Position numbers and translations under genes: made by a program. 64,000 bases of DNA from positions 1,922,001-1,986,000 of the forward strand of contig NC_047070.1 of NCBI RefSeq assembly GCF_902459465.1, written 5' to 3'. This DNA is from Asterias rubens. Taxonomy: Eukaryota. Below are positions 2,097-27,182 of this stretch, piece by piece (the stretch's first letter is position 1; each line of letters opens with the position of its first letter). The notes below the pieces were generated by a model. The model saw only the letters and a list, made by a program, of their open reading frames with translations, did not search any database and was not told the origin of the DNA.

Positions 2097-2459
2097 TTAA
2101 AGCCATTGGACCCTTTCGGTAAACAGTATTGTCCAAGGCCCACACTTTGTGTATCACAACTTATATATAAAATAACAAACCTGTGCAAATTTAATGCAAT
2201 CGGTCATCGGAGTCGGGAGAAAATAATAGGAAAACCCACCTTTGTATCTGCACGTTTTGCCGTGTCATGACATGGGTTTAAAATAAATTTGTAATTCTCG
2301 ATATCGAGAATTGATATTGTTTTACTGTTTTTTTTTTTAAGTAAAGCATTTCATGGAATAATATTTCAAGAGAAGTCTTTCACCAAACCCTGTAAGTTAT
2401 TTGTAAATCTGTGAACTTTTATTTTTTTTTTCTGTACCGAAAGGGTCCAATGGCTTTAA
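2097..2459. mobile_element. TTAA-flanked MITE, Kolobok-like (subfamily AGCCATTGGAC)
   Basis: TTAA|AGCCATTGGACCCTTTCGG…GAAAGGGTCCAATGGCT|TTAA; a second, 5'-truncated copy at ~8315-8667. Confidence 0.8.
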
Positions 2460-5965: not shown

Positions 5966-6281
5966 ACATTGCCTCTGTTTCTACTTTCCCTGTACTGTCA
6001 GCTCGAATAACTCGTCCTTTTCCTTCTAGTAAACGAGTCTCATTTATCACTGATATTCACTTCAGTTCCTTCTAAACCCCAATCCTCCCCCGCACGCTAT
6101 GTTGTTGCTTCTAACAAAATCAGGAAAGGAGTATTTTTAGTAACAGTCGAAGGCTGTATCGTTGGGGAGAGTATGTTCTAAATTTCCACGGATTGGCTCT
6201 TGGCTTTTTTTCCAAGGGGTGTAACATTGGTTGACTGTGATTGGTTTGGAATCATTCCTGCATGTGTGAAGTCTATACCTT

Positions 6282-6657
6282 TTAAAGGGAAGGTACACGT
6301 TTGGTTATTACTCAAAACAAATATTCACTTAAAAACTGCCTTGGAAACGAGCATTGGAGAGCTGTTGATAGTATAAAACATTGTGAGAAACGGCTCCCTC
6401 TGAAGTAGCATAGATTTTGAAATAGAGTTAATTTCTCACTAAAATAATAAAAGACTTCTAGCTAGAAGTCTTTTATTCCTATCTGAAAGCACACAAATTC
6501 GTCCAACAAGGGTGTTTTTCTTTCATCATTTTCTCCCGACTCCGATGATCAATTGAGCTCAAATTTACACAGGTTTGTTATTTTATGCATATAATGGGAG
6601 ATACCAAGTGAGAACACTGGTCTTTGACAATTACCAATAGTGTACCTTCCCTTTTAA
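6282..6657. mobile_element. TTAA-flanked MITE, Kolobok-like (subfamily AGGGAAGGTACAC)
   Basis: Terminal inverted repeats (TIRs) plus TTAA on both sides; sister copy at 27183-27558. Confidence 0.8.
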
Positions 6658-6870
6658 AGCCAAGAATCAAACTACATGTACACTGAACATGTACATGTTG
6701 TTGACCACTGGGGTTATAAAGCAGTGAACATGACGCCATGTTCACCATGGTTCAGAGAATAATGAACTCCAGGGTGAACAGGAAGACTGCTCCATTGAAT
6801 CAATTCTCAGTGTTTTTCTTCAGAAGAGACTGAGGTCGATTTCTCAGAGATACATGTAGCCCTATAACAG

Positions 6871-7083
6871 GGGTCGATTTCACAAAGAGTTAGGACTAGT
6901 CCTAGGAGATATTAAAACGTATGGCTAGTCCTAACTTGAGATAAGACTAGTCTTAACTCTTTGTGAAATCCACAGCAGGACTCTTAACGAGTTATTATAA
7001 CTTAAGGCTTAAATCCTACATGTAAGTTAGGACGAGTTAACCTTGAAATAAGACTAGTCTTAAACTCTTTGTGAAATCCACAG
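6871..7083. mobile_element. Harbinger-like MITE (GGGTCGATTTCACAAAGAG TIR, CWG target), internally duplicated
   Basis: CAG|GGGTCGATTTCACAAAG…CTTTGTGAAATCCA; related copies at ~16105-16280 and ~54013-54153. Confidence 0.7.
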
Positions 7084-7696
7084 CAGGACTCTTGCAATAT
7101 GAGAAATGATTCATACGCATAAATCATTTCTCTGATTCAAATGTTTTGGAGTGAAAATATCTTAACCACTACTTCGTGGAAAGGGAAGCCTTTCTCAAAA
7201 TAGTTAACGTGGAAAGGGAAGCCTTTCTCAAAATAGTTAAATACTTTCAACAGCTGCAGTTATTCTATTCAAGTATTTTGTTTATGGTCATTAGTTTTAT
7301 TATTCTATGATCAAACCTTTGAAGCATAAATAACAGACAAGTTTGATTTGAATAAGAAATGTGACATGGTCTATACAAACTGGAATGTCTACTGGTGGTT
7401 TGGACAATCAGTCAGAATAATTTCTGGCACACACCATGATGAGGAAATCCTGTCTTCATTTATTTTCATTTTCTTGTCACGCAACGCAACAAGATATTTA
7501 GCATATTGTGAACACAAAAAAACATAAATAAGACAAGATTCAAATCTCTTCTCAAAACTTTTATTATGTCAAAGCTTTTTCAAGGAGTCATTTTTGTGTG
7601 TCTGTTTTCTTTCGTTTTGTTTTATGGTTTTACTGCGCATTGAACAACCAGCAGGGTGGATATGTGTCCATTAAAAGTCTTTATTGCTATTATTTA

Positions 7697-8103
7697 TTAA
7701 AGGAACACGTTGCCTTGGATCGGACGAGTTGGTCTATAAAAAGCGTTTATAACCGTTTGTTATAAAATGCATATGGTTGGAAAGATGTTTTAAAAGTAGA
7801 ATACAATGATCCACACAAATTTGCCTCGAAATTGCGTGGTTTTCCTTTTACTTTGCGAACTAACACGGTCGGCCATTTATGGGAGTCAAACTTATACGGG
7901 AGTCAAAAATTTGACTCCCATAAATGGCCGCCCGTGGTAGTCGACGAGGTAAAAGGAAAACCGTGCAATTTCGAGGCGTGTTTGTGTGGATCATTGTATT
8001 CTACTTTTACAACATCTTTCTACCCATATGCATTTTATTAAAAATGGTTACAAACGCCTTTCAAAGACCAACTCGACCGATCCAAGGCAACAGGTTCCTT
8101 TAA
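7697..8103. mobile_element. TTAA-flanked, largely palindromic (foldback-like) MITE
   Basis: TTAA|AGGAACACGTTGCCTTGGATCGG…CCGATCCAAGGCAACAGGTTCCT|TTAA, with inverted symmetry continuing to the centre (~7890-7910). Confidence 0.85.
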
Positions 8104-9166
8104 GATGGTTCTCATGAGTTGCAAGAAAGAGATATTGTGAGTCAAAATGGAATGTCTTTATCTCGGAAATTGTAAACATTCTCTGATCACATTTAGCATC
8201 AGAGTCTCTCCACCTGCGCACTGGCGTCCCCACATGGAACAAACTCTTTCCAGAAGACCGCCAGTCTGACTCAATGATGAATTTAAAAAAACTGTTAAAA
8301 ACAATCGCACAACATCGGTAAACAGTATTGTCCAAAGGCCCACACTTTGTGTATCACAACTTATATATAAAATAACAAACCTGTGAAAATTTAGGCTCAA
8401 TCGGTCATCGGAGTCGTGAGAAAATAACCGGAAAACCCACCCTTGTTTCCGCACGTTACGCCGTGTCATGACATGTGTTTAAAATAAATCTGTTATTCTT
8501 GATATCGAGAATTGAAAATTGTTTTAATGTTTTCTCAAAAAGTAAAGCATTTCATGAAATAATATTTCAAGGGAAGTCTTTCACCATTACCTTCTGTAAA
8601 CCCTGTTATTTGTAAATCTGTGAACTTTCAATTTTTGTTCTGTTCAGAAAGTGTCCAGTGGCTTTAAAGACTGAACTGTTCAGAGCTCATTTATTTGTTT
8701 ATTGTTTCATCTTTATTTGTTCTGCGCCTTGATCTAGTGTCTAGGATATGTGTGCTTTATAAGAACTTTGTATTATTATTATTATTGGAGAAAAATTTGA
8801 AACTGTTTCAGCGAACATTTCAAACAATTCTTACTTATGGACAAAACATGGACAAAAATGTTGTACCACTCCTATCAAATGCTTGTAAAACCACAAATGA
8901 AATGATGTGAAACTAACAAACAATTTGTTTTCATTTGTCCCTTTCTAATTTGATGAAATGCCAATCTGTACTGTGCATTTGTTCCGGGCCATCTCTCAGC
9001 CAAAAGAGGCACATGTATACAGGTTCATATAACGCAATCATTTAGCAATCATAAATGATATAGACAAAATATATTTTTTAATGAACATGAACAAAAACTT
9101 AAAATTTGCTGTCATTCATTTTGATTTATATTTGGGACATAGAAACCAGAAGAAGAAAAACTTCAC

Positions 9167-9355
9167 TAAAGCCCGGTTCATACTTCCTGCGAATGCGAAG
9201 CGAATATGATGTCACAAATTCGCACAAATAATTCGCAGCAGTTGAACTCTGCTCGACTCACTTGCGAATATCGCTGCGAAAGGAGGGTTGTGGCGTCAAA
9301 TTCACGTCAAACTCACGTCGCATTCGCATTCGCAGGAAGTATGAACCGGGCTTTA
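9167..9355. mobile_element. Palindromic MITE (AAGCCCGGTTCATACTTCCTGCGAATGCG TIR)
   Basis: Long TIR; further copies at ~36829-37051, ~37860-38035 (partial) and ~56410-56607. Confidence 0.85.
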
Positions 9356-10305
9356 GGCCTAGTAGATTTAGTACAGAAGTGGTTTGTTACACAGCAGTGG
9401 TAAATATATTTCTAAATGAACATGAACAAAAATTTAAAACTGGTTGTCATTCATTTTGATTTATATTTGGGACATTGAAACCAGAAAAAAACCTTGACTA
9501 AAGCCTCGTAGATTTAGTATAGAATCGGTTTGTTGCACAGCAGTGGTAAATGCAAATGTACAATCAGTGTTATTCCAAACAACACTGAACCACTAATAAC
9601 GATTTGTAGGTGCGCAGCATACGTAACGAACCCCCCGATTCAATAGCTTGGTCTCCAGGCACAAAACACTGCTTGAATGTGTAAATTAATTGGGTCCGTG
9701 ACTAGGTCTCCAGTCATTCCAATATCAGCCTATTTGATGGTAACAATGTGTTGAGCTGTATACCAAACACCATAATGCATAACCCATGCTGAATGCATAC
9801 ATGTACTATACACACTTCTATTGCCATATTTGACAAATGAATATTTTCCCCTTTTCACGTTATTGTCCCCCTCAGGCCGCTTTGAGTGGTATTCTAAAAC
9901 ATCATCATCAGTTCAAAATGCTAGAATAAAAGGTCACACTTCGAGGCTTGTGAAAACGCCAGAGACCGGCATCCAAACCGGCGTGTAGATTCACCTTTGA
10001 CCTCATTCATTTTACATAGAGATACGCAGTCAAATTCTATTGTGGACTTGACAGCAGTGTACTGTTTGGGCAGCTAGCTCATGTCACTGCACGTTTATCA
10101 AATGGTCATTGTATCCAATGGAATTACTGGATCTAGCGCCAGGGACCTGTCTTTATCCTTGCAGATAAAGACAGAGGCCCAGTCTAGAATAAAGGTTGAC
10201 AGCTCGATTTGAAAATGTATTCTTGGTATTCAAAAGCAGAACTTATGTATAAGAAAATCGGAGATGTAACACACTTTTACACAACAAAATCATTCTAGTG
10301 GACAG

Positions 10306-10482
10306 CAGGCTTGTACGCTTCATTTTTTGAGTAGGGCAAGGGTACAAGGCAGTTTCTCCTTGATGAAGGGCACCCTATGATTAAAGTGTAAATTTCTACA
10401 GGAGCATTCCAAGGGCATCTAGGTAATGATCAGGGGGCATGGAGGCAATTACCTCTGTTGCCTCCAAGAATTACCAGGCCTG
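10306..10482. mobile_element. CAGGCCTG-ended ~175-bp MITE family (agggcaagggcaccaaggc core)
   Basis: Full copies at 36094-36270, 39929-40090, 48169-48353, 48410-48579 and 51499-51673. Partial copies at about 1368, 1920, 18490, 20755, 22150, 29385, 31465, 39545, 41140, 51334 and 55596. No consistent TSD seen; superfamily unresolved. Confidence 0.8.
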
Positions 10483-13400
10483 GGGCAGAATAACCTTATA
10501 TCCAGTATAGTGTTCTAACCATCTTGCGCCATATAATCCACTTGAACGATTTCACATTTCCAAAAATCTTTGTTGTATTTACATTTGATTATACTAGATT
10601 GATTTATTGGTCCACAAGTATTCTTAATACCAAACAACGAACAAGAAAAGAAAATTCACTTTACGAAATCCGTTTCTAAAAGAAACTAATTTATCAGGAG
10701 CTACATTGCCTTCCGAAATGCAAAATCAGATTTGAATAGAAATTTCAACAAACCACTGAAATGTATCATTTAAGAATCAAGACGAGAGCGGATTGGAGAA
10801 TATATCCGTCCATGACTACGCAGGACGGACAAAAACAACGCAAAAAAAAACAGACACTGCACAAAATGTTGGTAAAACATTACACAAAGCTTACATATCG
10901 TATGGAACACAATACATTATTGGTTTCAGGCAACCAGCTCAACTTGTTACAAAATGTAGTATTGCAATATAGGAATACGGCACCAAGTAATACAAATTCT
11001 CTGCGGTGCCCAAGGGTTAACAATGAGTCCCTCGGTATTTTATAACAACTGTCATCAAATATCTCTCAGCATATTGTTGTAAAATTGTGCCTTCAGACCA
11101 TTCCATGTCATATCCAGCGCTTCACGCCAATCTAACACTAAAATCATCCGCATAAGTTCGTTTACGCCTAACCCCCTTTAATAATAAAAAAATTAGCAAC
11201 CAAAATTTGAAAACAGATATTTTCCCCACGAAGCGATTTGCAAAGGGGGAAAGAAATGGGTACTGTAGCAATTCTGTTTGCAATATGTGAGCCATAAATT
11301 ATGAACTTTATATGAGGGCCCCGAAGCAAAGATAATGCGGCGGCCATCACTGGCCTAGGTTCCTGTCATAGGAGAGCACCAAGCTAGATCTTGTTGCGCA
11401 TCGCTAATTTTATTTCTTTGTAAAAGGAGATGGGAGAGAGAAGCAAAGATGACCTGGGGAGAAATAACACGACGCACCGGCTGACTGCAGATGGGGAGGG
11501 TGGTCACCGTCAAACATGATACCGGGCATCTTTATTGATGGTAACATCCGAATAAACAGATAGGGTGAACTGTCCGATGCTTCGACTACTCGATGATTCA
11601 CCCAGATACCATCATCATTCCAAAGCATTTTGGCTGTTGAATTTAGGTACACTCCCCAAGGACTTCTCTTCAAGTAAATGTGGGTGGTTTCTCGATAAAA
11701 TATAACCCACAACCAATCATGTGTTTAGCATAATCAACAACGATTCAATTCTTCAAACTTTGAATAGCAAAGTCTGACATTTCTAAAGCGTTTTAACCTC
11801 CAATTTCTAGGTGGGGGATTTAGGACATTTATTCCATGTTAATGTCTTGAGACAATTTGATGGCTTTGATGAAATAATTGACTTGAGGTAAAGACCGCGA
11901 TATGTGAGTAAATGTAGACATCAATCAGCTTTAATTTCTTCCGTATTTAACACAAGACTTTTCTACATTCATATGAACTCTTTACCAGACATTGACATAC
12001 TCAACCTTTTAAATTTGACATCTAGATTGATACTAAGTGCTGGTGTTCGGATAGTTCCAATCTTATTATATCAAGGAGAAGGATTTCACAGGATTTAAGA
12101 TTGTTTTAATTTATTTTTTCTAAATCAGAGGAAATATGTCAAGTCAACAGCCTGCAGTTTAAGTTCAACCTAATTATTTATTTGTTTGTATTTACTCATT
12201 TGTTTATATCAGTCACAACCTCTTGATTCTCACAACACACAACAAATTCAACACAGCGTCTACATAAGGCAGGTCAAAGGTCATATAAGAACACAAATAA
12301 CAACAGCATAAAAAGCACAGGTTTACTACAAATAAACTAAAAACAATGAAATGATGTCAAAATTAATCAAAAAAATGGTTCTGTACCTGAGGTGGAACAG
12401 AGTGCGTGTAACAGTGGATGCAATGTGCGGCCAACGCCTAGATGGGTGTGTTTGAGGAGGGCGTGTCTGTGTTTGTGGGCGTAGCTGAATACCAGTTGGG
12501 CGTGGCGTTCTCACTTCTCTCTGCTCGGCTATGGAGCAAGTGAAGGCCCTACAAAACCAAAACACATGCAAGGACACGAGGGGAAATAATGAAAACAATC
12601 AAGCAAAAAAAACATCAAAATGAAAGGAAAAGAACAACAAAATGAATAAAGTAGGAATGATTGATTGAAATTATAAAATACATCATTTGGCTTGGTCACA
12701 AACAATGTGGTGTATCACAAAATCCTTCGTAAGAGTTTTCCATATATTATATAATCAATTTCAGAATTGTTTTCCAAAAATTCAGCTTCTGGGAAGATTT
12801 GTTTGATCTTTTCTTCAAGTTATCAAAAAAATAGATTAGATAGTTTGGTCTATGGTTTGGTAAAATGTAAGTAACGTCAGCTATTGTCCATACATTTCAT
12901 AAAACACTAATAAAAGAGATTCTTCCGAAATATCTACTTTTTTTGTTTTTAATCATTGCTTTTTTGTGCTGTTTTTTTTTTTCTTTTTTTTTTTACAAAT
13001 TGAACCACCCATACACCAATGTGTGTTAAGCACTGTATACTCAGTACTTTCCAGACATATTACTCAAAATTGAAGTACATTAAAAAGAACCAAATATGAA
13101 ATCATGGAAGACATTACCCACTGGTTAAGTAACACCAGTGTGATCACTTTAAAAAATATCAAACTTAAAAATGATTATATTGCGATTGGCATATTATTAC
13201 GGAGTTATCTTCGATGTCATACATGTATACTGGTAAATCTGTCACGGTTGAGTTAACGTCGTCAATGGTGAAGATATTTCAGGGTCTGGTCCCAGCCTGT
13301 TCATCAGACCACTGGTGGGCAAAAAAAACCTAGGCCATAAGAAAATAATCCACTGTTTCTCGTCTCATACAGGGTGTCATGTCTAGAGCTGGATTTTCTT

Positions 13401-13786
13401 TTTCTTTTTGAATCATGTACAGTACATGTTTTGATTTTAATCATAAGAGGACATGTACGTACACCCATGTTAGAAAAAGCATCTTTTTTCAACCTGAAAT
13501 TTGTGATTAATATATAAACTTCAAAAACAAGTCTTTATACAAAATTGTTTACACAGAAATTAAAAAAAACGAAGATTCTTTCAAGTGAGTACAGAAACAT
13601 TGTGAATATTTTTTCTTGTGTGGTCTTAAAAAAGTGGGTCATAATTTTTTCAAGAATGCATGATGTCGCCCACTGGGTTTTAATCTTAGCAAGCCGTTGA
13701 TTTTTCACGTACCATGTAGCTGAGGTTTCGCCTGGTCTCTGCGCAATCTCTACACAGTAGTTCCGACCACCAGACTCATTAACACA

Positions 13787-14173
13787 TTAAAGACACTGGA
13801 CACTATTGGTAATCGTCAAAAACCAGTCTTCTCACTTTGTGTATCTCAACATTAACATAAAATAATAAACCTGTGAAAATCTGAGCTCAATCGGTCATCG
13901 AAGTTGGGAGATAATAATGAAAGATAAAAACACCCTTGTCACACGAAGTTGTGTGCTTTTAGATGGTTGATTTCGAGACCTCAAATTCTAAATCTGAGAT
14001 CTTGAAATCAATTTCCTGGAAAATTACTTCTTTCTTGAAAAGTATGTCACTTCAGAGGGAGCCATTTCTCACAATGTTTTATACTACCAACCTCTCCCCA
14101 TTACTCGTTACCTAGTGAGGTCTTACGCTAACAATTATTTTGAGTAATTACCAATAGTGTCCACTGCCTTATA
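13787..14173. mobile_element. TTAA-flanked ~350-400 bp MITE, main family (AGGCAGTGGACACTATTGGTAATT TIR)
   Basis: TIRs and a shared internal sequence (aaacctgtgaaaatttgagctcaat…gagggagccgtttctcacaatg). Confidence 0.85.
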
Positions 14174-15887
14174 GGAAGTGTTGGGTATTCTAACACTTGC
14201 TGCTTAACATTTTGAAGTCAATTGGCAGCTGCTTGCCAAATTCCATTAATTCTGGGCAGACGCTCTAGTTTGTTTTGTAACAATTCAAAAGGTTCAATGA
14301 TAAATGTGTTCAACCACTTCGCCTGTTAAATAAACAGTACACAACCATATCTACTTGGCTGTAGAAGGTTGCAATATGCAAAATACTAATGAGGCCATGT
14401 AAAACTAAATTTGCATAACAATAAGTCATTATCTTTTAAAGCTATTCTCACACTACCTACAAATAATGAATAAAAATTTAACAGAAAAACCAATACCAAA
14501 GTTGGAACCGAGGAGCGCAAATTTAAATCGCAATCAGCCAAAATACTTTCGTCTACCAAACTCTCTGCTTGTGAGCGAGAGTAATTTAAGCATGGCCGTC
14601 ATGAAGAAACATTGACTAATCTGCAAGAGTAACTTTAGGACCAAAGCGGCCCACTTCCTTCAATAGACCACAATAAAGGCCTAATCATGGAGGAAGAAGT
14701 GTGGAACATGCTTCAATATACCACAACAAAGGCCTAACCATGGATGAACAAGTGTGGTACATGCTTCAGTAGACCACAACAAAAACAGAGGAACCATCTT
14801 GAGCTCAACACAAATCAATTGTTTTGGATTGAAACGCAAGAAACCAGGAGAATCGCCCAAGACTCCAGCTCCGGGTTGGGCTCCGCCATCATTTTTAGAG
14901 CAGTGTAAATTTTTGCACAATGTGTTCTAAATATCAAACGAAGCCCATAGCCGTGACGGAGCACAACCCAAGGTTTTGATACAACCCCATACAATTGTTG
15001 CCACCAGTAACGGCCTCACGCCAACCATGGACGTTGGTTCAGTCAACAAGAAACAGGAAACCAGTATGGCATCTATTCGTTAAAATAATCACCACAAGAC
15101 TTCTCATTAATCCACCAAATCCTTGGAAGACATAAAAAAAGACGATGAGAAATAATGAGTAGCATTGAATCCATAGAAACCATTTTCCATTCTAGAAAAC
15201 AACCATGATCACTAATTAGCGTCAACATCCAATCCTTGAATTATGAAGAAGAAGAAAAAAAGGGGGGAAAAAGTCCAATGAAAAAATGCATCAAGCCCAT
15301 GGTTCCAGACAGCAGGAAACAACACAATGGCTAATTTACAGATCAGAGACCAGATCCTCCCAACCTTAATACAGCAGCGTCATCATCCACCAAAGAAGGA
15401 TACACGATATTAATAACCAATCCTCAACATCGCATCCTTGGCTAGGACCAGTACAAGCAAACAATGTTGAGAAAAATTAAGAGGCTGACTGGCTTTTTTT
15501 TTATTCCAGCGAGCGGTCAAGGCCGTCGACCAATCAGACATGCTTCCTCGCCTTCATGTACTGAGTCACAATCACCAAGTGACTATAAATAATTATACTT
15601 CTATGTTTCCTGGGTTCCTTTGAGGCCTCCTCGCAAGGCCCTGGTTGATGATCCCAGCCTCTACAAAAGACAACTATCCATCTTGGAAGAAGCAAGTGGA
15701 TTTGATGACCCATTGAGTGAGAGGTTAACGTCGTTAGACAGTGGGATATACACCACTATGAAAATGATTTGGTTAGTTAGACATGGGCAATGGTATGGCT
15801 GAGCCTGGATTGGAGGGGAAAAGGGCGTGGCCCTATTATGGTGACATGGCTAGTTGGTGTTAGGGTTACACACGTGTTATCATCACA

Positions 15888-15889
<2 letters not shown>

Positions 15890-15923
<34 letters not shown>
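15890..15923. repeat. (ATT)n microsatellite
   Basis: Direct reading; similar tracts at ~30827-30857 and ~8771-8786. Confidence 0.9.
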
Positions 15924-17579
15924 CACACAGCAAACAGGCATGGCAAGAACAAATTAACCTATTGAAGTTCTGACTCAGAACGGAATAAATATAGTTCAAA
16001 ATGCTGGCTCATCCTTTTGGTTTTCTTAGAAATAAATGTTAAAAATTAACGAACTTCTCAATTGTAAATAAATATACATTTTTCCTGCACAATACCATGA
16101 GATAAATAGTTAAATGCCCTGCCGTCCTAACTCTTCCTAACTTAAGACTAATCTTAGGATTTAGGACGAGTCCGAACCCTGCACTGTAGCATGCGGCCCT
16201 TAAGATTAATCCTAAGTTAAGACGAGTTACTCGTCCAACTCGAGATAAGACGAGTCCTAACTCTTTGTGAAATCGGCCCCTGTATTAGGGGCCTTACAAG
16301 ACCTGTTCGTCTACCAAGCACGCAAAGACCAATGTTTTATTCCAATATGAGGTCGTTAACAAAAATGACCGCCTTTTTGAAACAATGACAATTTTCAACT
16401 GATTATTCAAAACAAAAATTTCAAAAAAAGAGTTTTTGCAAAAAAAAAGCTCAAGGCCTTTTCTTAGGGTAGTTAGCAACAAAATGGCTGCCTTTTTAAA
16501 GCAATGAAATTTGTTGTTTGATTATTCAAACAAAACTGTTCAGGACCTTTTCCTTGGACATGACACTGATTCAAAATTCCAGTCTATAGTCTACACGTCA
16601 ATCCTAAGTTACTATGGTTAATCACACTGTTAAAGTATTATGTTAAACACACACAATTATGTTAATCAACACAAATCAAAAGTTAAAAGACCTCGTTGAG
16701 ATACCTAGTAGGGCCCAAAGATAAATTACTGTAAAATTGAAACTAGTTGGACATCATGTGAAACCTTCACATATAAATGGCTTCCTTATGTTATAACAAC
16801 ATCTTAATTATAAGGTTCTCTAATGGGGTTTGAGGTATCAATGTATTTATTTGAGTGGGTAACACCACGAGTAAATATCTACTTGCTGGGTAGATTATGT
16901 TCTACAAGATTCTTCTAAACGTATCAAAACTTCTACTCTATTTAGACAAAAGACTAATTTTAGTGACAGCAATATTTGTGCTGAGGGGGGAGACTGAAAA
17001 TACTTCCGACAGTCAAAATAAACTTTGCAGTAAATTTTCCTATTTCAGTACTGAAACAACTTTCCCAGTGGATAATTTAATGACATTTTTATTTGTCAGT
17101 CTATCAGCGACGTATAAAAACGAACGGAGCCTTTTATTTTGGAGGCATGACCCAGCTTTGAGTATCGAATGATCGGACTCTTACAATCAAGCTTCTACCG
17201 TGAGCCCTAGAACCGTCGAGTCTTGCTAAGGAACTATGGTATCAATTTTTCATTGTGATGATATTTGCTTCTTTATCAGTGTTGGCACAAAGGGTGAGTC
17301 AATTTGAGAAAAGTCGTGGCCCCTGGCAAATATTGATTAAAAATGTACTTTCTATAGAGTTGTCCAGCGACCAAAAAAAAACACACAGTATCATTGGTGT
17401 GGGGACTTTTTTATCAAAAGGGGTTTCCAACAATGCTATTTAGTAACGGTTCTTGAACTCCTTAAGTTCCAAGAAATATGTCACTTGGCTGGGAATTCTT
17501 CTCTCTGAAGAAGATTATTATTTATACCAACTGATTAAATGTTTTTGTTTTGAGCTTTTAATACATGTTTGAAAAAGGT

Positions 17580-17930
17580 TTAAATACACTGGACACTATT
17601 GGTAATTGTCAAAGACCAGTCTTCTCACTTGGTGTATCTCAACATATGAATAAAATAACAAACCTGTGAAAATTTGAGCTCAATTGGTCGTCGAAGTTGC
17701 GAGATAATAATGAAAGAAAAAACATCCTTGTCACACAAAGTTGTGTGCTTTCAGATGCTTCTAGTTCTGAGGTCTCAAAATCAAATTCATGGAAACAAAC
17801 TTCTTTCTCAAAAACTATGTTACATCACAATGTTTTATAATACCAACAGCTCTCTGTTAACTCATTACCAAGTAAGGTTGTATGCTAATAATTATTTGAG
17901 TAATTACCAGTTAGTGTCCACTGCCTTTAA
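17580..17930. mobile_element. Main-family TTAA MITE copy
   Basis: Same TIR and internal sequence. Confidence 0.85.
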
Positions 17931-19910
17931 GCGGAATGACATTAATTTAATGACCGGTAAAAATCAAAAACTGGGAACCTTTTCCAAACAACTCGTCTCA
18001 GGCTTGCAACTCTTCAGCGGGAAAAAAAACCTCTGAAAATTATTTTTCTTTTGCTCTCGTCTTAGGCCCTTACATGCCTGTAGTATACGAGGAAGTTTTA
18101 GCTTATGGTTGTTTTTTTAAACTTTTTTTTTACTCGCAAGGAAGAAAATATCCTTTCTTGCTTTCATATTTTTGAAAATTAATGTTGGCTCTTTGCTATA
18201 TAGGAATTGTTTTCTATTTCTATCTATGTGTAGCTGATAATATTTACCAAAGCTTTATTATTAGTACTTATTTCTGGATTGATGCCAGTCCGGTATCTGA
18301 ATAACCTGAATCATTGTTCTACATATAGAAATAGGATTCTCGGAAACAGAGTGATGTATTTCTAATCATTGTCTATTTGGCTAGAGGGTGGCTTGTATGA
18401 TGTAAAGAAGTTAAGCCCATTTACTGGACTTAACATCATTAAGGGTTTCAAGTGAAATAATTGAAGGGGAAAAAAGTAAAATGGACAATATCTTGTAAGG
18501 CATGGTTAGGCAACGGAGAAAATTGCCTCATGCCCTTGGGCATTGCCTTGGTGCCCTGGGAAATGTTTCCTATATCAATGACAAACTACTTTGCCCTTAC
18601 AACTATCAGGCCTGCTCAGCAGGTGAAAAAGAACATGGACCAAACTGTAACTGTTTAAAATTGAGATTCTTTGAGGAAATCTTTTCAAACATTTTAACCA
18701 TTGCCTAAAGCTTGCTTGTAACTGTATGTATTATTTTGGTTTTACCCTGACACTAATATGTGTGTAAGCACTGTATGTATACTCGGGTTTTTTTCAATTT
18801 CTGTGAACAAATCTTAAGCATATTTCTCGAGTTGGATTCAAACTCAAGACCTTTGCAATTATAGAGCAGTGTCTTACCAACTTGGCCTTCAAGATTATTC
18901 GGTAGCTAGAGGCAGTTCAAATCCTATGCTTTAGCAGCGGGTACGTCAACCTTTAAATAGATGTTAAATTTCCACCGGGACAAAGAGTGTTTTTACCCTT
19001 ATACTGATGTGTGTATTAAAGCACTGTCTTCGAGTTCTGGGCAAAAAGAAAAAGAGTAATTTGGACCTTATTCACACAGTGGACATGAGATGAAAGCTAG
19101 TTTAGTCTGAAAAAGTGCAGACTGATCATTGAACTTTATTCCCTGTGGTACCAGGAGAAATTGGCGGGGAAAAAAACATCTTGAAAGTTCAGTGGGGAAG
19201 TATTTGAGGAGAACGTTTTGGACGTTAGCCAATCTATATTAAACATGACCTATTTCTGTTGTAGTTTGTTGACCAGTTATTGACCACTTTGGGAATATTG
19301 ACTGGACTGGTTTCAAACCTGGATTCTTGTGATCAGCAGAGGACATGATGAACTCAGACTTGAGACGAGGGAATGAGGTCTCTACGGTTAGTCTGGGGCG
19401 GATTGATCGTTACCACAGGCTGTATTAAAACGTGGGTGGAGTACCCATTTTGAGGACTCTTACCACCCACTGGACCCCAGTTTGCAAGGCCTTCAAGGTG
19501 CATCTCTCTGCACTCTCTGGGTGTTGACGCCCACATTCAATTTATAAATATGTTTTTACGAGATTTTGTTTTGTTTTTGCTTCCGTCTGGTGCAATTTGA
19601 TAGTTGTCTCCTGTGTAATAAAGGCTAAATAATTTTAGAGACAAATTCTGCAACTATATATATCTGCACATCCATGTTGCATGTGAAGCTCAATTTTCCC
19701 TATAGCGTTTTCCTGAAGACATCCTATCAAGTATTTAAGTTTTCCTGCTTAAGTAATAGATCACCAGCTAGTGTCATGTTTCAACCGATAATAGATTTTA
19801 TTTTATTTTCTTAAATTTGAAAATGGAAACAGAAATACTTCCGAAGATGCTGGGCACTTTGTTAATTAACAGGAAAGTATGAACTTTTAACAAGAGCTGT
19901 ATTGAGCTTC

Positions 19911-20292
19911 TTCAAGGCACTGGACACCATTGGTAATTACTCAAAATAATTATTAGCATAAAAACTTACTTGGTAACAAGCAATGGAGAGCTGTTGATAG
20001 TACAAAACATTGTGAGAAACGGCTCCCTTCGAAGCAATGTAGTTTTCGAGAAAGAAGTAATTTCCCACGAATTTGATTTCAAGACCTCAGAATTTGATTT
20101 TGAGGTCCCGAAATCATTTGAAAACACACAACTTCGTGTGACAATGTTGTTTTTTCTTCCATTATTATCTCGCAACTTCGATGACCAATTGAGCTCAAAT
20201 TTCACAGGTTTGTTATTTTATGCATATGTTGAGATATACCATGTGAGAATAGTGGTCTTTGACAATTACCAAAGGTGTACAGTGTCTTTTAC
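19911..20292. mobile_element. Main-family TTAA MITE copy
   Basis: Same family; flanked by a 23-bp direct repeat. Confidence 0.8.
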
Positions 20293-20357
20293 AAGAGCTG
20301 TATTGAGCTTCTTAAAGCATCAACTGCTACCTATTAACTCCTTTAAGAGCCTGACAC

Positions 20358-20746
20358 TTAAAGGCAGTGTCCGACACTATTGGTAATTACTCAAAATAAT
20401 TATTTGCATAAAACCTTACTTGGTTACGAGTAATGGGGAGAGATTGTTAGTATAAAACCTTGTGAGAAACGGCTCTCTCTGAAGTAACGTAGTTTTCGAG
20501 AAAGAAGTAATTTTCCACAAATTTGATTTCAAGACCTCAGATTTAGAATTTGAGGTCTCAAAATCAAGCATCTGAAAGCACACAACTGCGTGTGACAAGG
20601 TTTTTTTTTTTTCATTATTATCTCGCAACTTTGACGACCAATTGAGCCCAAATTTTTTACAGGTTTGATATTTAATGCATTTGTTGAGATACAGCAAGTG
20701 AGAAGACTGGTTTTTGACAATTACCAATAGTGTCCACTGTCTTTAA
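20358..20746. mobile_element. Main-family TTAA MITE copy
   Basis: TTAA on both sides, TIRs. Confidence 0.85.
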
Positions 20747-21319
20747 AAGTGTCAGGCAGGAATTTCATCTTTGTAAAGGCAAGGCCATTGTAATTTTGCG
20801 AAAAGGACTTCAATTGGAAAATCTTAAAGCCAATTAGAAACTTTTGAAGGGGCACCTACAGTAGGCCAAGATGAGGGGTAACAGGGTCCATCCTTAAATC
20901 CTACACTTTTTAACATTTACCAGTGAGTTGACCGACCATTTGAACCACACTACTATACTGGTTGTGTTTGGTGGCACAACTGTGTACAGAACTAACTGTA
21001 TACAGCAAAAACCAACAGCAAACACCATGTTAACGCCCAAAATACACCATGGTCCAATCACAGATAGCTACTTGGCACAACAAAGTAGCTTAGCACAACA
21101 AAGTTATGCTTACCAGAATTAGGCTAGGCTATCAGCCAAAATACCATTTAGCATTTGTGACTGGTATCCTGATCATTTTTGGTTAGCAGACATTTTTCAG
21201 CACTATACACTTTGTGCTTTAAAAACAATTATTTTGTTGTTGCGCACACACTCGACAGCACAATACGCGCCAATAACAGGATGCATAGAAAGCAAGAATA
21301 ATCGTTTAGATGTGGGAGG

Positions 21320-21465
21320 AAAATCTGAAATGGGCAAAAAAACACGCAATCAAGTAGGGACTGTGAAAACCCAATCCTGTTCCACATGCAAGGCTCCGGT
21401 CTGATCGGGATTCGAACCGGGGTCCACAGAGATGAAAGGTACAGAAAGAAACCAATGAGCCAACC
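21320..21465 (-). mobile_element. tRNA-derived SINE fragment
   Basis: Reverse-oriented B-box (gggattcgaaccggggtcc); a similar fragment at ~50030-50090. Confidence 0.55.
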
Positions 21466-21982
21466 TGTGTCTTTAACTTTTCAAGTTCATGTCATTATCA
21501 TATCATGCTTGGGCAGCTTTAACAAGCTGGGTAATTAACAACTGCAAAGCTGATGCTTGCTAGATAAAACATGAGAGAGAAGGTCCTAGAAGACATGATA
21601 TGCCACCTGCTGGCTGACCTGCCAATTAGGTCTGACAACATGACAAGCTTTCTGCCTGTTAACCATGAATGATGAGATGTTACCACATTCATTTGGTTCA
21701 TTCATTTATAGTTCATTCGTTTGGTTTCTCATGGTTGAAGTACAGGGCCAAATTTTGTGCAAAAAATATTGCTTAACATTGTTTCTGCTAAGCACGACTA
21801 AGCAAGGTACCAGTTACATTTTGTATAATGTAAAATGGTATTTTAGCTGGTAACCTTATTCTGGTAAGCACGTTGTGCTTAGCAACTTTGTATGCTTAAG
21901 CCAAGCAGATCTAGGAAATTGGGCCCTGCCCTCCACATAACCCACTTCACCCACAGCAATTGCCATGGTGCCCGTGCTTTTG

Positions 21983-22140
21983 TAGACTTGTGGACAAGTC
22001 GTTAAATCGGCCCCACGCGCTGAGATAGTGCTCTCGCGAGATCACTACTCTCGCGCGAACTGATGGCTCCCCGATTTCGACTCCTCATAGAGTTCTATCT
22101 CAGAGCGTGGAACCGATTTAACGACTTGTCCACAAGTCTA
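21983..22140. mobile_element. Palindromic MITE with TA flanks
   Basis: TA|GACTTGTGGACAAGTCGTTAAATCGG…CCGATTTAACGACTTGTCCACAAGTC|TA. Confidence 0.85.
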
Positions 22141-25100
22141 GTGCTTTTACTGTGGCGCCCTTTGCAATACTTCATATGCAAATTTAAATTTTCCTCATAC
22201 AGAAGTGCCCCTCGACATGAGGAAAATTGCTGTACACCTTCAAGAATGTAATTCAAGACCTGTTACACGCGTACATGTCAAAACCTAAGAATATTGCCTC
22301 ACTAAATTGAGTTACTTGAAAGAAGGCTGCTGGTAAGTGTATCAAATACATGATCTTAACATTATGTATGAGAGTACATGTATGGTATGATTTGAGGTAT
22401 CAATATGTTTTTGGTTTGTGGTAACACCATGTGTGTATCTACTTGCCAGGTGTAGGTGTTAAAGATAGCCAACGTTTTGTAATTTTCGCTCAAACAGCCA
22501 AAACTTGTTACATGAGGAGAGCCAATTACATCAAACATTCAGAAAGACTACCCAATCCAACAAATTTAGGGAAAATACAAAAAAAGTAAATTAAAATGAA
22601 CAATTTTTTTAAAAATCTAAACACCAGCCCAAAACTAAGCCAAATAAAAGTTAACTACATGTATACTAAACTTCATTGTTTAAATTTAAATCTGAAGTTC
22701 ACTGGGAACAACACTGTGACACCTTGAAGCTAAACTTTCAGGTACGAACGATACCAGATATGAAATTGAAACATCACTGAATGAAAAGACAATTGGATAG
22801 TCTTTGGAAAGTTGGTTCCTCATTCATGAACATTTTGGTTTCATTGTAAAGCGATGTGAATGCTAGCAAACAGAGCGCAAAGGCATGGTATTCATTGTTG
22901 CCCAGCAAACATCAAGTGCCTTAAGTTGCTGAAAATTCCTAGCTTTGTAAACCTACTACATTTTATTATTTCAAAGATGCATTTCAAAGATGCAGGTGTA
23001 GACATGAGTTTGTAATTTTTTTGCAAATAATGAAAGAGACCCTTGTTGCACAAATGTGTGTTCACATGCATAATAAAAGGTTTCATGCCTGAAGTATTTT
23101 AATATTTGAGTGAGAAATAACCTCTTTCTCAAAAACTATGTTACTTTCAAAGGGAGCCGCTTCTAACAAATTGTATACTATCAACAGCTCCCTGTTGCTC
23201 GTTACCAAGTAAGTTTTTAAGCTAAAAATTACCTTGAGTAATTACCAATAGTGTCCAGTGCCTTTAACTGGTTCAGTGCCGCTTTTTGTTTGCATTTTGA
23301 ACCTTAAAACCCATACATGTTATCACAAGAGGGCATTAGCACTCAAGAAGTATTGACTTTGGGATGTACCAATGCAACACAAACCCACACGATACATTTT
23401 TGTTTGGGTAGGAAGACTTATTTGTTGTAGAGAATTTTGAAAACCTCAAAATGCTGAGTTTGGTAACCAATTTTTCCTATATACATTGTATGTATGATAA
23501 TGGCGTTTTCAGACTACGTAAAATAGATCATACATGTACGACCTTGGCACTGATAGAGTAAAGCAGCAAGCAATGTTCACGACAAAATTAGGCTTTGGTA
23601 TGTGTGGATTGAATGTGCATCTAATACATACCAGTACTGGTATGGTATGTACTCAGAGTACACTGTGAATATGCAGTGTACTTACCTTCAAATACGAGAG
23701 ACGCTTATATTACAGTTCACACGCTATTTCCATCCCCGCTCATCCTAAAATATGTTGTCTAATTTTTACACTTCCCTTCCATTTTGTTTTGATGTTCAAT
23801 TCTTTCTATTATAATAATGGACCCAGCATAGAACGTTTCCTGTTTTCCAACACATGTACAGCGGTTTATTACTTGTTTCCTTGCTTGGTCTATAAAGTTG
23901 CGCAAAAGTTTCAACAATACGGGAAACCGATTTGGGCAAACAGTTGGTTCAATCCTCCCTCATAAAGTTGTGGAAGGAAATATGTTGAGAGTAAAAAATT
24001 ATACACCCTTTGTTTACTGAAGTGTTGCTGACAGAGAAGAGTGGCAATAAAGTCAATGTGCTTTTAAACCAAAGCCTTCATGTGCGAAAGTGTGGTGACA
24101 TCAGAAAGGTCTTTTTAATTGCAGTGTTTCCTTTTTCTGAAACGCAACTTTCCTTTGTCGGATGTCGTAGCCATCTGTTGACTTGTATTAGAACATGGCC
24201 CATTGTTCAAGGTTGTTTTCTCACATTGTTTCATAGATATGAAAAAGTTCAGAAAAAAATGACTTGCTCCCCTCTCGATAACAGCATCAGTCCTCTACAA
24301 ATATACATTTTTTATTTTAAAAAAAATTATTTTACAGAATTGGTGGCAACCAATACATGAGATAACAAAACCTGTGAAATCTTGGGCTTAATCCATTGTG
24401 TGTGAGTCGGGAGAGAATAGTGAAAACCATGCACATTTTCAGCATGGTACCCTTAACACGTTGTCCTTAATTTTGGTTGTAATAATTAAGATCAACTGGT
24501 GCACTTTTTTATGTTTTCAGTTAAAGTTTTCTCCAATATGACAATATTTCAGACGGAAATATCACACAGAAACAAAATGGTTCAAGTATTAATTTCATAT
24601 CAGGCTTTCAGATTATTTTTTCCAGAGTTTTTTTTTTTTACCATAACCAGCCCTAATAATGGCCCACATATATAAACAGATCATAACACCCCAAAATGTT
24701 TAACAATGTCAAAACAACTTTTAAAGCTTCTATTATTTGGAGAAACAAGTGTGAGGATTTGAATCTTGAGAACAGCAAGGACTCAAACATGTTCCTAATG
24801 TTATCAATAAAAGGCTGCTACATGTATGTCGACGCTACTCCTAAATACATCATGGTACCGGTAAAACACTTCATTTGTAAAAACAACTTTCCTTTGTTTC
24901 GCTTTGTATAATAAAATTAACCAACAGGGAAATTAACACGGTATATACCGACCACAGAGTCGATTGAATGATATAAAAAAAAAAAATAAAAAAAAAAGGA
25001 AACTTGATCTTATCATTCTTTAGATTTAAATACCGTCGACTGATACAAAGTATTGTGTATCTCAAAGAGAAAGTACATAAGTAATAACCAATTAATCTGT

Positions 25101-25536
25101 AAACAAAGTGCAGTACAGGAACAATGCGGAACCAATAATCCGAACAAGGAATTGCTGGGGTTATAACGAGGTTTATGCAAATGAGTGATGGTTGTTAGGA
25201 TGACAATGGATGTGGGGGTGGGGGGGGGGGGGTCATGCATACACGATATCCAACGAAACAAAACCATGCCAATCAAACCATTCAACAGACTCAATGGGTA
25301 CATCGTCACAACTTGGTCAACATCGATAAATGAAGACTTTTTCCCTCCCCGCCGTATACAAAACAAAATGAGGCAAAAAAATGTGGATCAAGAATACAGT
25401 GGCAACAACAAAAACGAAATCAAGACATCGTGCCTACTCAGCCAAAGTCCATCGAGCCAACATCGACCAATCAAAAGCCCTAAACACCACTCAAAAGTGC
25501 AGTGGTCTCTGGGCATGCTCAGACACAATACGATAC

Positions 25537-25695
25537 CTGACCAACTATAGTTTCTTCAGTTCGACCAATCGCCTCGAGCCACCGCTCCCGCAGGACGGTG
25601 GGCCGCTTGGGCACGCGATAAAAATGGCGCGGGTCCTCGGTTCCTTTGTAGCGCGAACGAAACTTGCAATTAGGAAAACCGCATGTTGTCGGCAT
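25537..25695 (-). CDS. CTBP: First coding exon of a THAP-domain CtBP (N-terminal half of THAP zinc finger, 53 aa)
   Basis: Translates to MPTTCGFPNCKFRSRYKGTEDPRHFYRVPKRPTVLRERWLEAIGRTEETIVGQ, which has THAP hallmarks (CxxxxC, F..P, W) and closely matches my recollection of the C. elegans CTBP-1 N-terminus. Acceptor tctttttcttgtgtttacag at 25715-25716, in-frame TAG 18 nt before the ATG, donor CAG|GTATCG at 25536. It lies head-to-head with MAEA. THAP identity is high confidence; the CtBP assignment is inferred because the dehydrogenase exons are not in the window. Confidence 0.8.
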
Positions 25696-27182
25696 GACTT
25701 GAGGACAGTCCTACCTGTAAACACAAGAAAAAGACAGAAAAGAAAACAGATATTAAGTCTCCAGGATCAAAATTTGTCATTAAAAATTACCCTCTAGCAG
25801 ATTATTTTACCCTTTATCTGTGCACTGTATGTCCGTAATACATGTACATAGTTAACAAGCAAGACATCTTTAAGTAAACAGCCATTTTATTTATTAACCG
25901 TTGGGGTATTTTACCTCAAATTTAATTTCAACTTAAGGTTCAGGAAGTGGCAATTTTCCCCAACAAAACATCTACAAAAGGTGTGCCTGAGAGACAATTT
26001 CCCCTACCCCCTACCACCCCGCGTCCTCTCTACTCGATACACCACACCTAAAATATCAAGTCTCCTACCAAATACAATCCTTTTCATAAATATTGATTAC
26101 CAATGAGACTCCAAAAAGGGTCTCAATGAATATCAATAAGGAGACTAAATTAGGAAAAATGATACCATCGCAACAAAAATGATAAATAATACGAGTGGGG
26201 GACACAGCCCCACAAACAAGCCACGAGAGTTCATTGGTCTGTTTCAGTGTATCAAACTTCATCGACCAAGTATGGCCATTGCAGAACCCTATTCCAAGAT
26301 CAACATTATAAACTGTGGCACACCGCGGGCTAAAGATTCAAACTCAAAAGGAGATCGCAGTACGGCAAAATAGCTTTAGAAAAATGATACCTGGGGTAGT
26401 ACGATACCAAGTAACCATGGATATATAAAACTTATAAAAAGATAGTATTCCAGTGACTGTTTCACATTCAGGTGACAGCACTATTTTTCAATTGTTTATG
26501 GGTTCGTACAGCGAGGACAAGGTATGTATCCTCTTTTGATGGCCACACGTTTTTGCCTCTTTACTTCAGGCCAGACTGTTACAAAGCCACCGGCTCCAAG
26601 GACAAAAATCTATAGAAATTTTATTAGAGTAAGGGAGAGTGGATACTATGCTAGCCTGGGTTGCTAGGATTCTTCCTGGATGATCTGATGTTAAGGGTGT
26701 AGAGAGAGTATCCCAGGGTAGTGGTAGTTGGAATAATTCTGCAGGCCAAGGGGGAATTCACTTTTCCCTTGGGAGTTTGCATGGTATAATCACCAATGAA
26801 TAATGTAATATTGCCCCTCATTTGAGGGCTTTTTTTTTCCGAATCTTTTTCAAATTTTGTCCGAAAAAATGGGAAGACAATCAAGTTTGAATCATACTTT
26901 GGAAATTAAGTTGAATTTGAGACTTACTTTAACTGCTTAAAAAATCTCTGGACTTTATACCCAAAAAATATTTTTTTGTCAGATTCAATTTTAGCACAAT
27001 AATTCAATTGAACACTACCTAAGTACACTGAAGTTGTTTTGTGTATATATCCAGGCTATTTTGAGCAAATACATTTTGAAAATTTCAAACTTACGTATAA
27101 CTTGGGTGCTATCCTAGGAGATCACATTTTTTGAATGACAAGACGATTTTATTCATCTTTTAACAGTTGTACACAAGGTACT

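What the first reader, a model, noticed from the sequence alone, without database searches (positions are those of the whole stretch)
25537..25714. Isolated THAP zinc-finger exon of a THAP-CtBP corepressor, invisible to the ORF track
The 53-codon exon is below the 60-aa ORF cutoff yet closely matches the recalled N-terminus of C. elegans CTBP-1. THAP-containing CtBPs are established for nematodes, echinoderms and cephalochordates and absent from vertebrate CtBPs. The THAP fold is split: its C-terminal half (expected LR(I/V)CSxHF) was not found in 1-25536, implying an intron over 25 kb or an exon I missed. Such a DNA-binding corepressor is easily mis-annotated as a separate gene.
Basis: partly seen in the sequence, partly recalled or inferred. 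Interest (0 to 1): 0.7.

Follow-up and report, generated by a model that had tools for sequence, protein, structure and literature searches.

The report
First exon of sea-star THAP-CtBP gene
This short stretch is the real first coding exon of a sea star's CtBP gene-silencing protein and supplies half of a DNA-gripping zinc finger, but the gene is already correctly annotated in public databases and belongs to a family described in 2008, so it is ordinary.

Summary
Window 25537-25695 (minus strand) is a 53-codon exon. It starts at an ATG and ends at a GT donor. It is 83% identical to the solved THAP domain of C. elegans CtBP (PDB 2jm3, E 1e-28) and occurs once in the 417.6 Mb genome.

The missing second half of the zinc finger (LRICSCHF...) lies 32,059 bp downstream on the same strand, 6.5 kb beyond the window's start. 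Five CtBP dehydrogenase exons follow it. The resulting 7-exon GT-AG model (535 aa) is 100% identical to RefSeq XP_071793622.1, "C-terminal-binding protein 1-like isoform X1" of Asterias. It is 94% identical to the Acanthaster planci protein.

Contigs of two runs not recorded as RNA cover exactly 25537-25716. They run on past both ends into sequence not found nearby, so the exon is most likely transcribed and spliced on both sides. The letters of the joined partner were not shown.

Between two Asterias species the coding sequence differs at 14 of 1608 sites, all synonymous, and at 0 of 159 sites in this exon.

Annotated THAP-CtBP proteins also turned up in crinoids, urchins, sea cucumbers, hemichordates, amphioxus, an annelid, flatworms and nematodes. 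The scan did not report this before on other DNA. Interest is low.

The parts
25537..25695 (-). Coding part of the first coding exon: Met1-Gln53. It holds the first half of the THAP zinc finger, including zinc ligands Cys5 and Cys10 and the conserved Pro29 and Trp39.
   Evidence: Translation; 83% identity to PDB 2jm3 at E 1e-28; Pfam THAP profile positions 1-42; identical to residues 1-53 of RefSeq XP_071793622.1; 0/159 differences from the A. amurensis ortholog.
25696..25714 (-). 19-nt 5' untranslated part of the same exon, behind the AG acceptor at 25716-25715. It contains an in-frame TAG at 25713-25711.
   Evidence: Sequence. Contigs of runs X1 and X16 align exactly 25537-25716 and then continue 25-27 nt in letters not on the stretch, which points to an upstream 5'UTR exon. 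The 2-nt overlap fits an upstream exon ending in AG (table 8).
25535..25536 (-). GT splice donor of intron 1, phase 0 after codon 53.
   Evidence: Sequence. Both contigs end their match exactly at 25537, and the X16 contig runs on 26 nt further. At least 25 representative homologues from other genomes break at the same residue with a Val (GT read-through) codon.
1..25534 (-). The part of intron 1 inside the window. The whole intron is 32,059 bp and ends at C10:1915478, 6.5 kb beyond window position 1. It holds a 45-bp minisatellite, dispersed repeats and a conserved, probably transcribed block at 11236-11797.
   Evidence: Gene model; colinear with the A. amurensis locus at about 94% identity; tandem repeat; held by RNA-like runs.

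Best explanation
Window 25537-25714 (minus strand) is the first coding exon of the single CtBP gene of a sea star of the genus Asterias. It encodes residues 1-53 of a 535-aa THAP-CtBP protein. These residues form the first half of a C2CH THAP zinc finger and include two of the four zinc ligands (Cys5, Cys10). A 32-kb phase-0 intron separates this exon from exon 2. Exon 2 supplies the other two ligands (Cys57, His60), the rest of the THAP fold, and the basic MDKQKKPKRPRM stretch that is the normal N-terminus of THAP-less CtBPs. Five further exons encode the NAD-binding dehydrogenase-like CtBP core and a short C-terminal tail. By analogy with C. elegans CTBP-1a (inferred, not shown here), the complete finger lets the corepressor bind DNA directly instead of relying only on PXDLS-motif transcription factors. 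Because the finger is split by the intron, a transcript that reaches exon 2 without exon 1 in frame gives an ordinary CtBP that cannot bind DNA. The gene structure, the identity to RefSeq and the selection are shown. Transcription and splicing of the exon rest on contig shape in runs not recorded as RNA. DNA binding, and isoform switching in this species, are inferred.
For: The exon and its splice signals are in the sequence. It is 83% identical to 2jm3. The best 2-Hacid_dh_C exon in the genome lies 46 kb downstream on the same strand. A 7-exon all-GT-AG in-frame model has introns of 32059/2870/5965/1091/813/2053 bp. The model is identical over 535/535 residues to P0190 = XP_071793622.1, whose UniRef100 entry covers two Asterias species, and is 94% identical to the A. 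planci isoform X2. Pfam on the joined protein finds THAP at 33.5-37.4 bits (over the cut-off), 2-Hacid_dh at 95.6 and 2-Hacid_dh_C at 184.5; exon 2 alone scores nothing. Human CtBP1/2 match at E 1e-188 and 2jm3 matches over residues 1-86 at E 5e-44. The C2CH spacing is C5-x4-C10-x46-C57-x2-H60. Contigs of two runs show exon-shaped coverage that ends at both splice sites and runs on beyond them, with no depth in the flanking intron bins of X1. Against the A. amurensis ortholog the coding sequence has 14/1608 differences, all third-position and synonymous, and 0/159 in exon 1, while noncoding DNA is about 94% identical. Sea-cucumber contigs carry an uninterrupted 547-aa THAP-CtBP frame, so they look like cDNA. 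In C. elegans, CTBP-1a carries the THAP domain and CTBP-1b does not, and C5A/C10A mutations abolish rescue (bioRxiv 10.1101/2020.06.09.143248).
Against: The letters that follow the donor in the contigs were not displayed, so the exon 1-exon 2 junction was not read directly in this species. It rests on the identical RefSeq model and on orthologues. Run X1 is listed as 'RNA?' and X16 as '?', so their RNA nature is inferred from the shape of the coverage. Expression is low in the raw RNA runs sampled: depth 1-2 in X21, similar to the neighbouring intron bins, and none in X22. Exon 1 alone falls 0.3 bits short of the Pfam cut-off. DNA binding and target sequences are untested for any echinoderm.
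Confidence: 0.93

Rival explanations
1. The exon is a remnant of a THAP-bearing transposase (P-element or THAP9-like) or one member of the large dispersed THAP family of this genome, and sits upstream of CtBP by accident.
For: The genome holds at least 124 other THAP-domain matches, many repeated. Echinoderm THAP families are reported as expanded and linked to transposable elements (PMC13228809).
Against: Only one copy of this sequence exists in 417.6 Mb. It matches the CtBP-type THAP at E 1e-28 but THAP11 only at E 0.45. It holds only half a finger, and the other half lies directly before the CtBP core. It has 0/159 substitutions between two species whose noncoding DNA differs by about 6%. 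It appears spliced on both sides in contigs.
Confidence: 0.01
2. The exon is real and spliced, but in this animal it is joined mainly to something other than the in-frame exon 2. Examples would be a non-productive isoform that ends after a 50-odd-residue half finger, or a separate small gene, so that the working CtBP is the THAP-less form.
For: Sea-cucumber contigs from six assemblies join exon 1 to a 60-nt extension of exon 2 that carries two in-frame stops. RefSeq lists THAP-less isoforms starting at the internal Met in A. planci, S. purpuratus and A. japonicus, and an urchin isoform with another first exon plus exon 2. Depth on exon 1 in the raw RNA runs is low. The junction partner was not read here.
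Against: The protein is perfectly conserved across the whole THAP region between Asterias species, and the first 77 residues are identical to A. planci. About 78% identity to nematode THAP domains over 86 residues is hard to explain without a translated, complete finger. In Asterias there is no AG within 157 nt upstream of the exon 2 acceptor, so the sea-cucumber alternative acceptor is not available. A full-length THAP-CtBP frame exists in sea-cucumber contigs.
Confidence: 0.05
3. The match is a chance open frame.
For: None beyond its short length.
Against: E 1e-28 to 2jm3; 53 representative proteins match at E <= 1e-10 in 1.84 billion.
Confidence: 0

Closest known systems
C. elegans CTBP-1a (THAP domain structure PDB 2jm3; Nicholas et al. 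2008, J Mol Biol 375:1, PMID 18005989; the paper was not readable here and is cited from reference lists and from my memory)
   Same: An N-terminal C2CH THAP finger is fused to a CtBP dehydrogenase-like core. Identity is 83% over the 53 residues of this exon and E is 5e-44 over residues 1-86. The zinc ligands C5 and C10, whose mutation abolishes function in the worm, are the ones encoded by this exon. THAP-less isoforms come from the same locus.
   Different: The linker and C-terminal tail are unrelated. The sea-star protein keeps the canonical PELNG..YRY tail motif and is shorter (535 aa against about 700 or more). Here the finger is split by a 32-kb intron.
RefSeq XP_071793622.1, C-terminal-binding protein 1-like isoform X1 (Asterias amurensis; its UniRef100 entry is shared by two Asterias species)
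   Same: Identical over all 535 residues to the model built from this genome. The locus is colinear and the coding span is of similar size (45.9 kb against 46.5 kb).
   Different: Noncoding DNA differs by about 6%, so the window's genome is a sister species (most likely A. rubens, judged from assembly size; my memory). The coding sequence has 14 synonymous differences.
Vertebrate CtBP1/CtBP2 and insect CtBP
   Same: The core matches human CtBP1/2 at E 1e-188. It shows the GLGRCG NAD motif and the R/E/H positions. Met98 of the sea-star protein begins MDKQKKPKRPRM, which parallels the insect N-terminus MDKRKM.PKRPRM.
   Different: No THAP domain was found in any arthropod or vertebrate CtBP listed. 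Vertebrates instead vary the N-terminus through RIBEYE (PMC9907507).

Membership tests
THAP zinc finger (Pfam PF05485) | C2CH signature C-x(2-4)-C-x(35-53)-C-x2-H | tested here: met
   C5-x4-C10-x46-C57-x2-H60 in the joined protein. The first two ligands are in this exon and the last two in exon 2.
THAP zinc finger (Pfam PF05485) | Score over Pfam's gathering cut-off (23.9 bits) | tested here: met
   The exon alone scores 23.6 bits, just under. Residues 1-100 score 37.4 bits and the whole protein 33.5 bits. Exon 2 alone gives no hit.
THAP zinc finger (Pfam PF05485) | Other conserved positions: Pro after the FxR motif, Trp in the helix, Phe after CxxH, and a C-terminal AVPTIF-like box | tested here: met
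   P29, W39 and F61 are invariant in the 15-species alignment, and the DVPVPDP box aligns with DIPVPDP of C. elegans. The match to 2jm3 covers residues 1-86.
THAP zinc finger (Pfam PF05485) | Zinc-dependent, sequence-specific DNA binding | not testable with these tools
   Inferred from C. elegans CTBP-1a and from memory of Nicholas 2008.
CtBP corepressor | D-2-hydroxyacid dehydrogenase fold with NAD(H) site (GxGxxG) and the Arg/Glu/His triad | tested here: met
   PF00389 scores 95.6 bits and PF02826 184.5 bits. GLGRCG is at 290-295, SRGG at 374-377, HENEPF at 401-406 and CTPHC at 420-424, all aligned to human CtBP1/2. The roles of these residues are from established knowledge.
CtBP corepressor | Orthology to CtBP rather than to another 2-hydroxyacid dehydrogenase | tested here: met
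   Human CtBP1/2 match at E 1e-188, while the next dehydrogenase family matches at 1e-46. This locus holds the top-scoring 2-Hacid_dh_C exon in the genome.
CtBP corepressor | PXDLS-binding cleft and the C-terminal tail motif PELNGxxYRY | tested here: met
   DVATVAF (156-162) and HEKVLNEA (172-179) are identical to human in the alignment. PPELNGSATYRY is present in the tail, a motif described in PMC9907507. Binding itself was not tested.
THAP-CtBP group (CTBP-1a type) | THAP finger and CtBP core in one reading frame of one gene | tested here: met
   The all-GT-AG in-frame model equals the RefSeq protein. The same architecture is annotated in three other sea-star or echinoderm classes and in hemichordates.
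THAP-CtBP group (CTBP-1a type) | A transcript in this species that joins the THAP exon to the CtBP exons | tested here: inconclusive
   Contigs end exactly at both splice sites and run on 25-27 nt, but the letters were not listed. The junction is shown only in sea-cucumber contigs.

The most novel reading that the evidence does not exclude
The phase-0 intron that cuts the THAP finger between its two pairs of zinc ligands is an ancient bilaterian feature that serves as an isoform switch. The THAP-CtBP fusion predates the split of deuterostomes, spiralians and ecdysozoans and was lost in arthropods and vertebrates. Choice of first exon, or of the acceptor at exon 2, decides whether CtBP is made as a DNA-binding repressor or as a plain corepressor. 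The conserved, probably transcribed block at window 11236-11797 inside intron 1 might be part of that switch in sea stars.
Probability: 0.4. Interest if true: 0.35.

Novelty: already known. Interest (0 to 1): 0.15.

Why it matters
For this genome it matters little. The gene is correctly modelled in RefSeq, and THAP-bearing CtBPs have been a described group since 2008, with echinoderms reported among them (the phyla are from my memory of that paper, which I could not read). The case is a clean example of how a 53-codon exon behind a 32-kb intron escapes ORF-based reading.

It also has some wider use. The 2023 survey of CtBP evolution (PMC9907507) cites the THAP paper but does not treat the THAP domain. 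A 2026 sea-cucumber genome preprint (PMC13228809) states that a THAP gene with a dehydrogenase domain is absent from other sea cucumbers and the other species it analysed. The database hits here contradict that statement: Apostichopus XP_071827993, sea-cucumber contigs, sea stars, crinoids and an urchin all carry it. A short note on the true spread of THAP-CtBP and on the conserved intron position might therefore be useful, but it is incremental.

Tried and rejected
- **Search inside the window.** A six-frame search of the window for [LVIM][RK][LVI]CxxHF found nothing. This was correct, because the second THAP half lies outside the window.
- **Representative-protein search with the 53-aa exon.** It returned mostly short ORF fragments from unassembled genomic contigs and nematode proteins. 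The animal's own protein was hidden because it clusters with THAP-less CtBPs at 50% identity. A word-based search with a nematode hit was needed to reach the echinoderm entries.
- **Nicholas et al. 2008.** The paper could not be read, so the 'nematodes, echinoderms, cephalochordates' statement is from my memory only.
- **Read laying (one call).** The loose-end letters at 25537 and 25716 were not among the rows shown, so the junction partner and the 5'UTR exon were not identified. No exon of matching depth was seen within 25717-30600.
- **CpG observed/expected scan for a promoter.** Uninformative.
- **Sea-cucumber 60-nt insert.** A search for it in the Asterias locus gave only chance matches. 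It is the tail of the sea-cucumber intron (an alternative acceptor), and Asterias has no AG within 157 nt of its exon 2 acceptor.
- **Structure and complex prediction.** Not run. A solved structure at 83% identity exists, and no binding claim is made.
- **Earlier findings near this place.** None.

Full report
**1. What is there**

On the minus strand, window 25695-25537 reads ATG plus 52 codons: MPTTCGFPNCKFRSRYKGTEDPRHFYRVPKRPTVLRERWLEAIGRTEETIVGQ. The next two bases are GT. An AG sits 19 nt before the ATG, at 25716-25715, behind a pyrimidine-rich run. An in-frame TAG lies at 25713-25711. The ATG-to-stop frame is 59 aa, so it was indeed hidden from a 60-aa ORF list.

The peptide matches one solved structure strongly. 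That structure is 2jm3, the THAP domain of C. elegans CtBP, at E 1.1e-28 with 44 of 53 residues identical. The next hit, THAP11, is at E 0.45. Pfam THAP covers only profile positions 1-42 of 87 and scores 23.6 bits against a cut-off of 23.9. That is what half a domain should give.

**2. Where the rest is**

The window is C10:1922001-1986000 of a 417.6 Mb assembly. The exon occurs once in that genome. The top-scoring 2-Hacid_dh_C exon in the genome lies at C10:1901570-1901866 on the same strand, 46 kb downstream.

I fetched C10:1872001-1922000 and read the minus-strand frames. Five CtBP core exons follow it.

All seven exons have AG acceptors and all six introns have GT donors, and the phases agree. 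The model is:
- exon 1: 1947695-1947537
- exon 2: 1915477-1915288
- exon 3: 1912417-1912245
- exon 4: 1906279-1906135
- exon 5: 1905043-1904837
- exon 6: 1904023-1903899
- exon 7: 1901845-1901237, ending in a stop
- introns: 32059, 2870, 5965, 1091, 813 and 2053 bp; product 535 aa

**3. Independent check of the model**

A word-based search seeded with a nematode THAP-CtBP, followed by cluster look-ups, returned P0190 = XP_071793622.1, [quoted passage not shown]. Its UniRef100 entry is shared by two Asterias species. My model is identical to it over 535 of 535 residues. It is 94% identical end to end to the Acanthaster planci isoform X2.

Earlier notes of this scan call the genome a sea star. 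The locus is colinear with the A. amurensis record CP134959.1 at about 94% noncoding identity. The window's animal is therefore a sister species. Judged from assembly size it is most likely A. rubens, but that is my memory and was not tested.

Pfam on the whole protein finds THAP (33.5 bits, or 37.4 on residues 1-100), 2-Hacid_dh and 2-Hacid_dh_C. Exon 2 alone finds nothing. Human CtBP1 and CtBP2 match at E 1e-188, and 2jm3 matches residues 1-86 at E 5e-44.

The zinc signature is C5-x4-C10-x46-C57-x2-H60. The NAD motif GLGRCG and the Arg/Glu/His positions are in place.

**4. Transcription**

I used it on window 24700-30600, with two raw RNA runs and two contig runs that hold the exon.

Contigs of X1 (205 nt, depth 37) and X16 (233 nt, depth 23) align to exactly 25537-25716. 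They continue for 25-27 letters past these ends in sequence absent from the stretch: X16 at both ends, X1 only at the 25716 end because its record starts at 25537. The intron bins beside the exon have no depth in X1. This is the shape of a spliced internal exon. It also shows that an upstream 5'UTR exon exists further than 5 kb away.

X1 is listed as "RNA?" and X16 as "?", so their RNA nature is inferred from this coverage shape. The overhanging letters were not among the rows printed, so the partner of the donor was not read. Raw-read depth was low (1-2 in X21, similar to the neighbouring intron bins) or nil (X22).

**5. Selection**

Against the A. amurensis ortholog the coding sequence has 14 differences in 1608 nt. 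All are at third positions and all are synonymous. Exon 1 has none in 159 nt. A 351-nt perfect run surrounds the exon.

Across 15 species from sea stars to nematodes and flatworms, 40 columns of the first 81 residues are invariant. Identity to nematode THAP domains is about 74-79% over the first 86 residues, which is higher than the 59-63% found over the core or the whole protein in the two nematode comparisons made.

**6. How it most likely works**

In C. elegans the ctbp-1 locus gives CTBP-1a, with the THAP domain, and CTBP-1b, without it. Only 1a rescues a neuronal defect, and C5A/C10A mutations destroy that rescue (bioRxiv 10.1101/2020.06.09.143248). The two cysteines mutated there are the ones this exon encodes.

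I infer that the sea-star protein is a corepressor that can dock on DNA through its own finger. The infer extends to the intron that splits the finger: it would make DNA binding optional.

Support comes from relatives:
- RefSeq lists THAP-less isoforms that start at the internal Met of exon 2, namely A. planci X4 and S. purpuratus X3. That Met begins MDKQKKPKRPRM, which mirrors the insect CtBP N-terminus.
- An urchin isoform has another first exon joined to exon 2 (P0119).
- Sea-cucumber contigs carry either an uninterrupted 547-aa THAP-CtBP frame or exon 1 joined to an acceptor 60 nt upstream of exon 2, which puts two stops between the finger halves.

In Asterias that acceptor is not available, because there is no AG within 157 nt of exon 2. 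Whether and how Asterias makes a THAP-less form was not determined.

**7. Rivals**

A transposase or dispersed THAP remnant was a fair worry, since the genome has at least 124 other THAP matches. It is excluded by single copy, splicing, the half-domain layout and conservation. A chance frame is excluded by the E-values. The remaining open point is quantitative: how much of the gene's output carries the exon in frame.

**8. Comparison with what is known, and novelty**

THAP-bearing CtBPs were defined by Nicholas et al. 2008. I recall its abstract naming nematodes, echinoderms and cephalochordates, but the paper was not readable here.

Annotated proteins with THAP plus both dehydrogenase domains were found in:
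- sea stars
- crinoids
- a sea urchin
- sea cucumbers
- three hemichordates
- amphioxus
- the annelid Lamellibrachia
- nematodes of both major classes

Flatworm entries carry the same THAP N-terminus, with at most one of the two dehydrogenase domains flagged in the precomputed Pfam list. No arthropod or vertebrate protein with the THAP N-terminus appeared in these searches, and none from any other phylum.

Of the roughly 58 representative hits to the exon, 25 stop matching right after residue 53 and continue with Val, the read-through of a GT donor. The intron position is therefore widely shared.

This exon, this gene and this family are already known and already annotated. The only mildly fresh points are the breadth of the family and the shared intron position.

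**9. Verdict**

Novelty is "already known" and interest is low.

Noticed in passing
window 11236-11797 (inside intron 1): A block of about 560 nt that is nearly identical between the two Asterias species (perfect runs of 376 and 183 nt against a 94% background). The RNA-like runs that hold exon 1 also hold 0.73-0.93 of its words, and true RNA runs of a relative hold 0.41. It is probably transcribed. Its strand, boundaries and role are unknown, and it has no obvious reading frame. It might be an alternative first exon, a non-coding RNA or an enhancer.
   Followed up: partly
L020:308-520 and L021:53-265 (sea-cucumber contigs, Logan): Six sea-cucumber contigs join THAP exon 1 to a 60-nt extension of exon 2. 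The extension ends ...TTTTCCAG, so it is an alternative acceptor, and it carries two in-frame stops between the two finger halves. Other sea-cucumber contigs (L018, L019) have the uninterrupted 547-aa frame. This may be a splice-level switch between DNA-binding and plain CtBP.
   Followed up: partly
C10:1915478-1915634 (outside the window, last 157 nt of intron 1): There is no AG dinucleotide for 157 nt upstream of the exon 2 acceptor, within a long pyrimidine-rich tract. Such AG-free zones usually go with a distant branch point.
   Followed up: no
window 4615-5965: A 45-bp minisatellite with 30 copies at 98% identity lies inside intron 1. It produces the two long artefactual ORFs (515 and 471 aa) on opposite strands in the ORF list.
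   Followed up: yes
window 27182-27558, also 6281-6643, 13787-14170, 17580-17931, 19910-20289, 20357-20747, 37452-37840, 47407-47733, 49113-49515, 58024-58417, 61066-61451: A dispersed repeat of about 380 nt has at least 11 copies in the window and more in the flank, at 70-90% identity. With the other repeats at 28246-29821, it draws very deep, polymorphic read and contig coverage, presumably from many genomic copies.
   Followed up: partly
P0109, P0216 (amphioxus RefSeq isoforms): Two amphioxus CtBP isoforms (Branchiostoma lanceolatum X1 and the B. floridae x B. japonicum hybrid X1) replace the first 18 or so residues, including both N-terminal cysteines, with unrelated sequence, yet keep the rest of the THAP domain. 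This is either a missed small exon or a real isoform with a disabled finger.
   Followed up: no
PMC13228809 (Holothuria glaberrima genome preprint): The preprint states that a THAP gene with a dehydrogenase domain is absent from other sea cucumbers and from the other species it analysed. Apostichopus japonicus XP_071827993 (P0197), sea-cucumber contigs (P0200) and all other echinoderm classes sampled here have it.
   Followed up: partly
window 28325-28383: Both raw RNA runs show about 50-110 reads that switch strand between 28325 and 28383 (table 5). This fits a short inverted repeat or hairpin inside one of the repeats upstream of exon 1.
   Followed up: no
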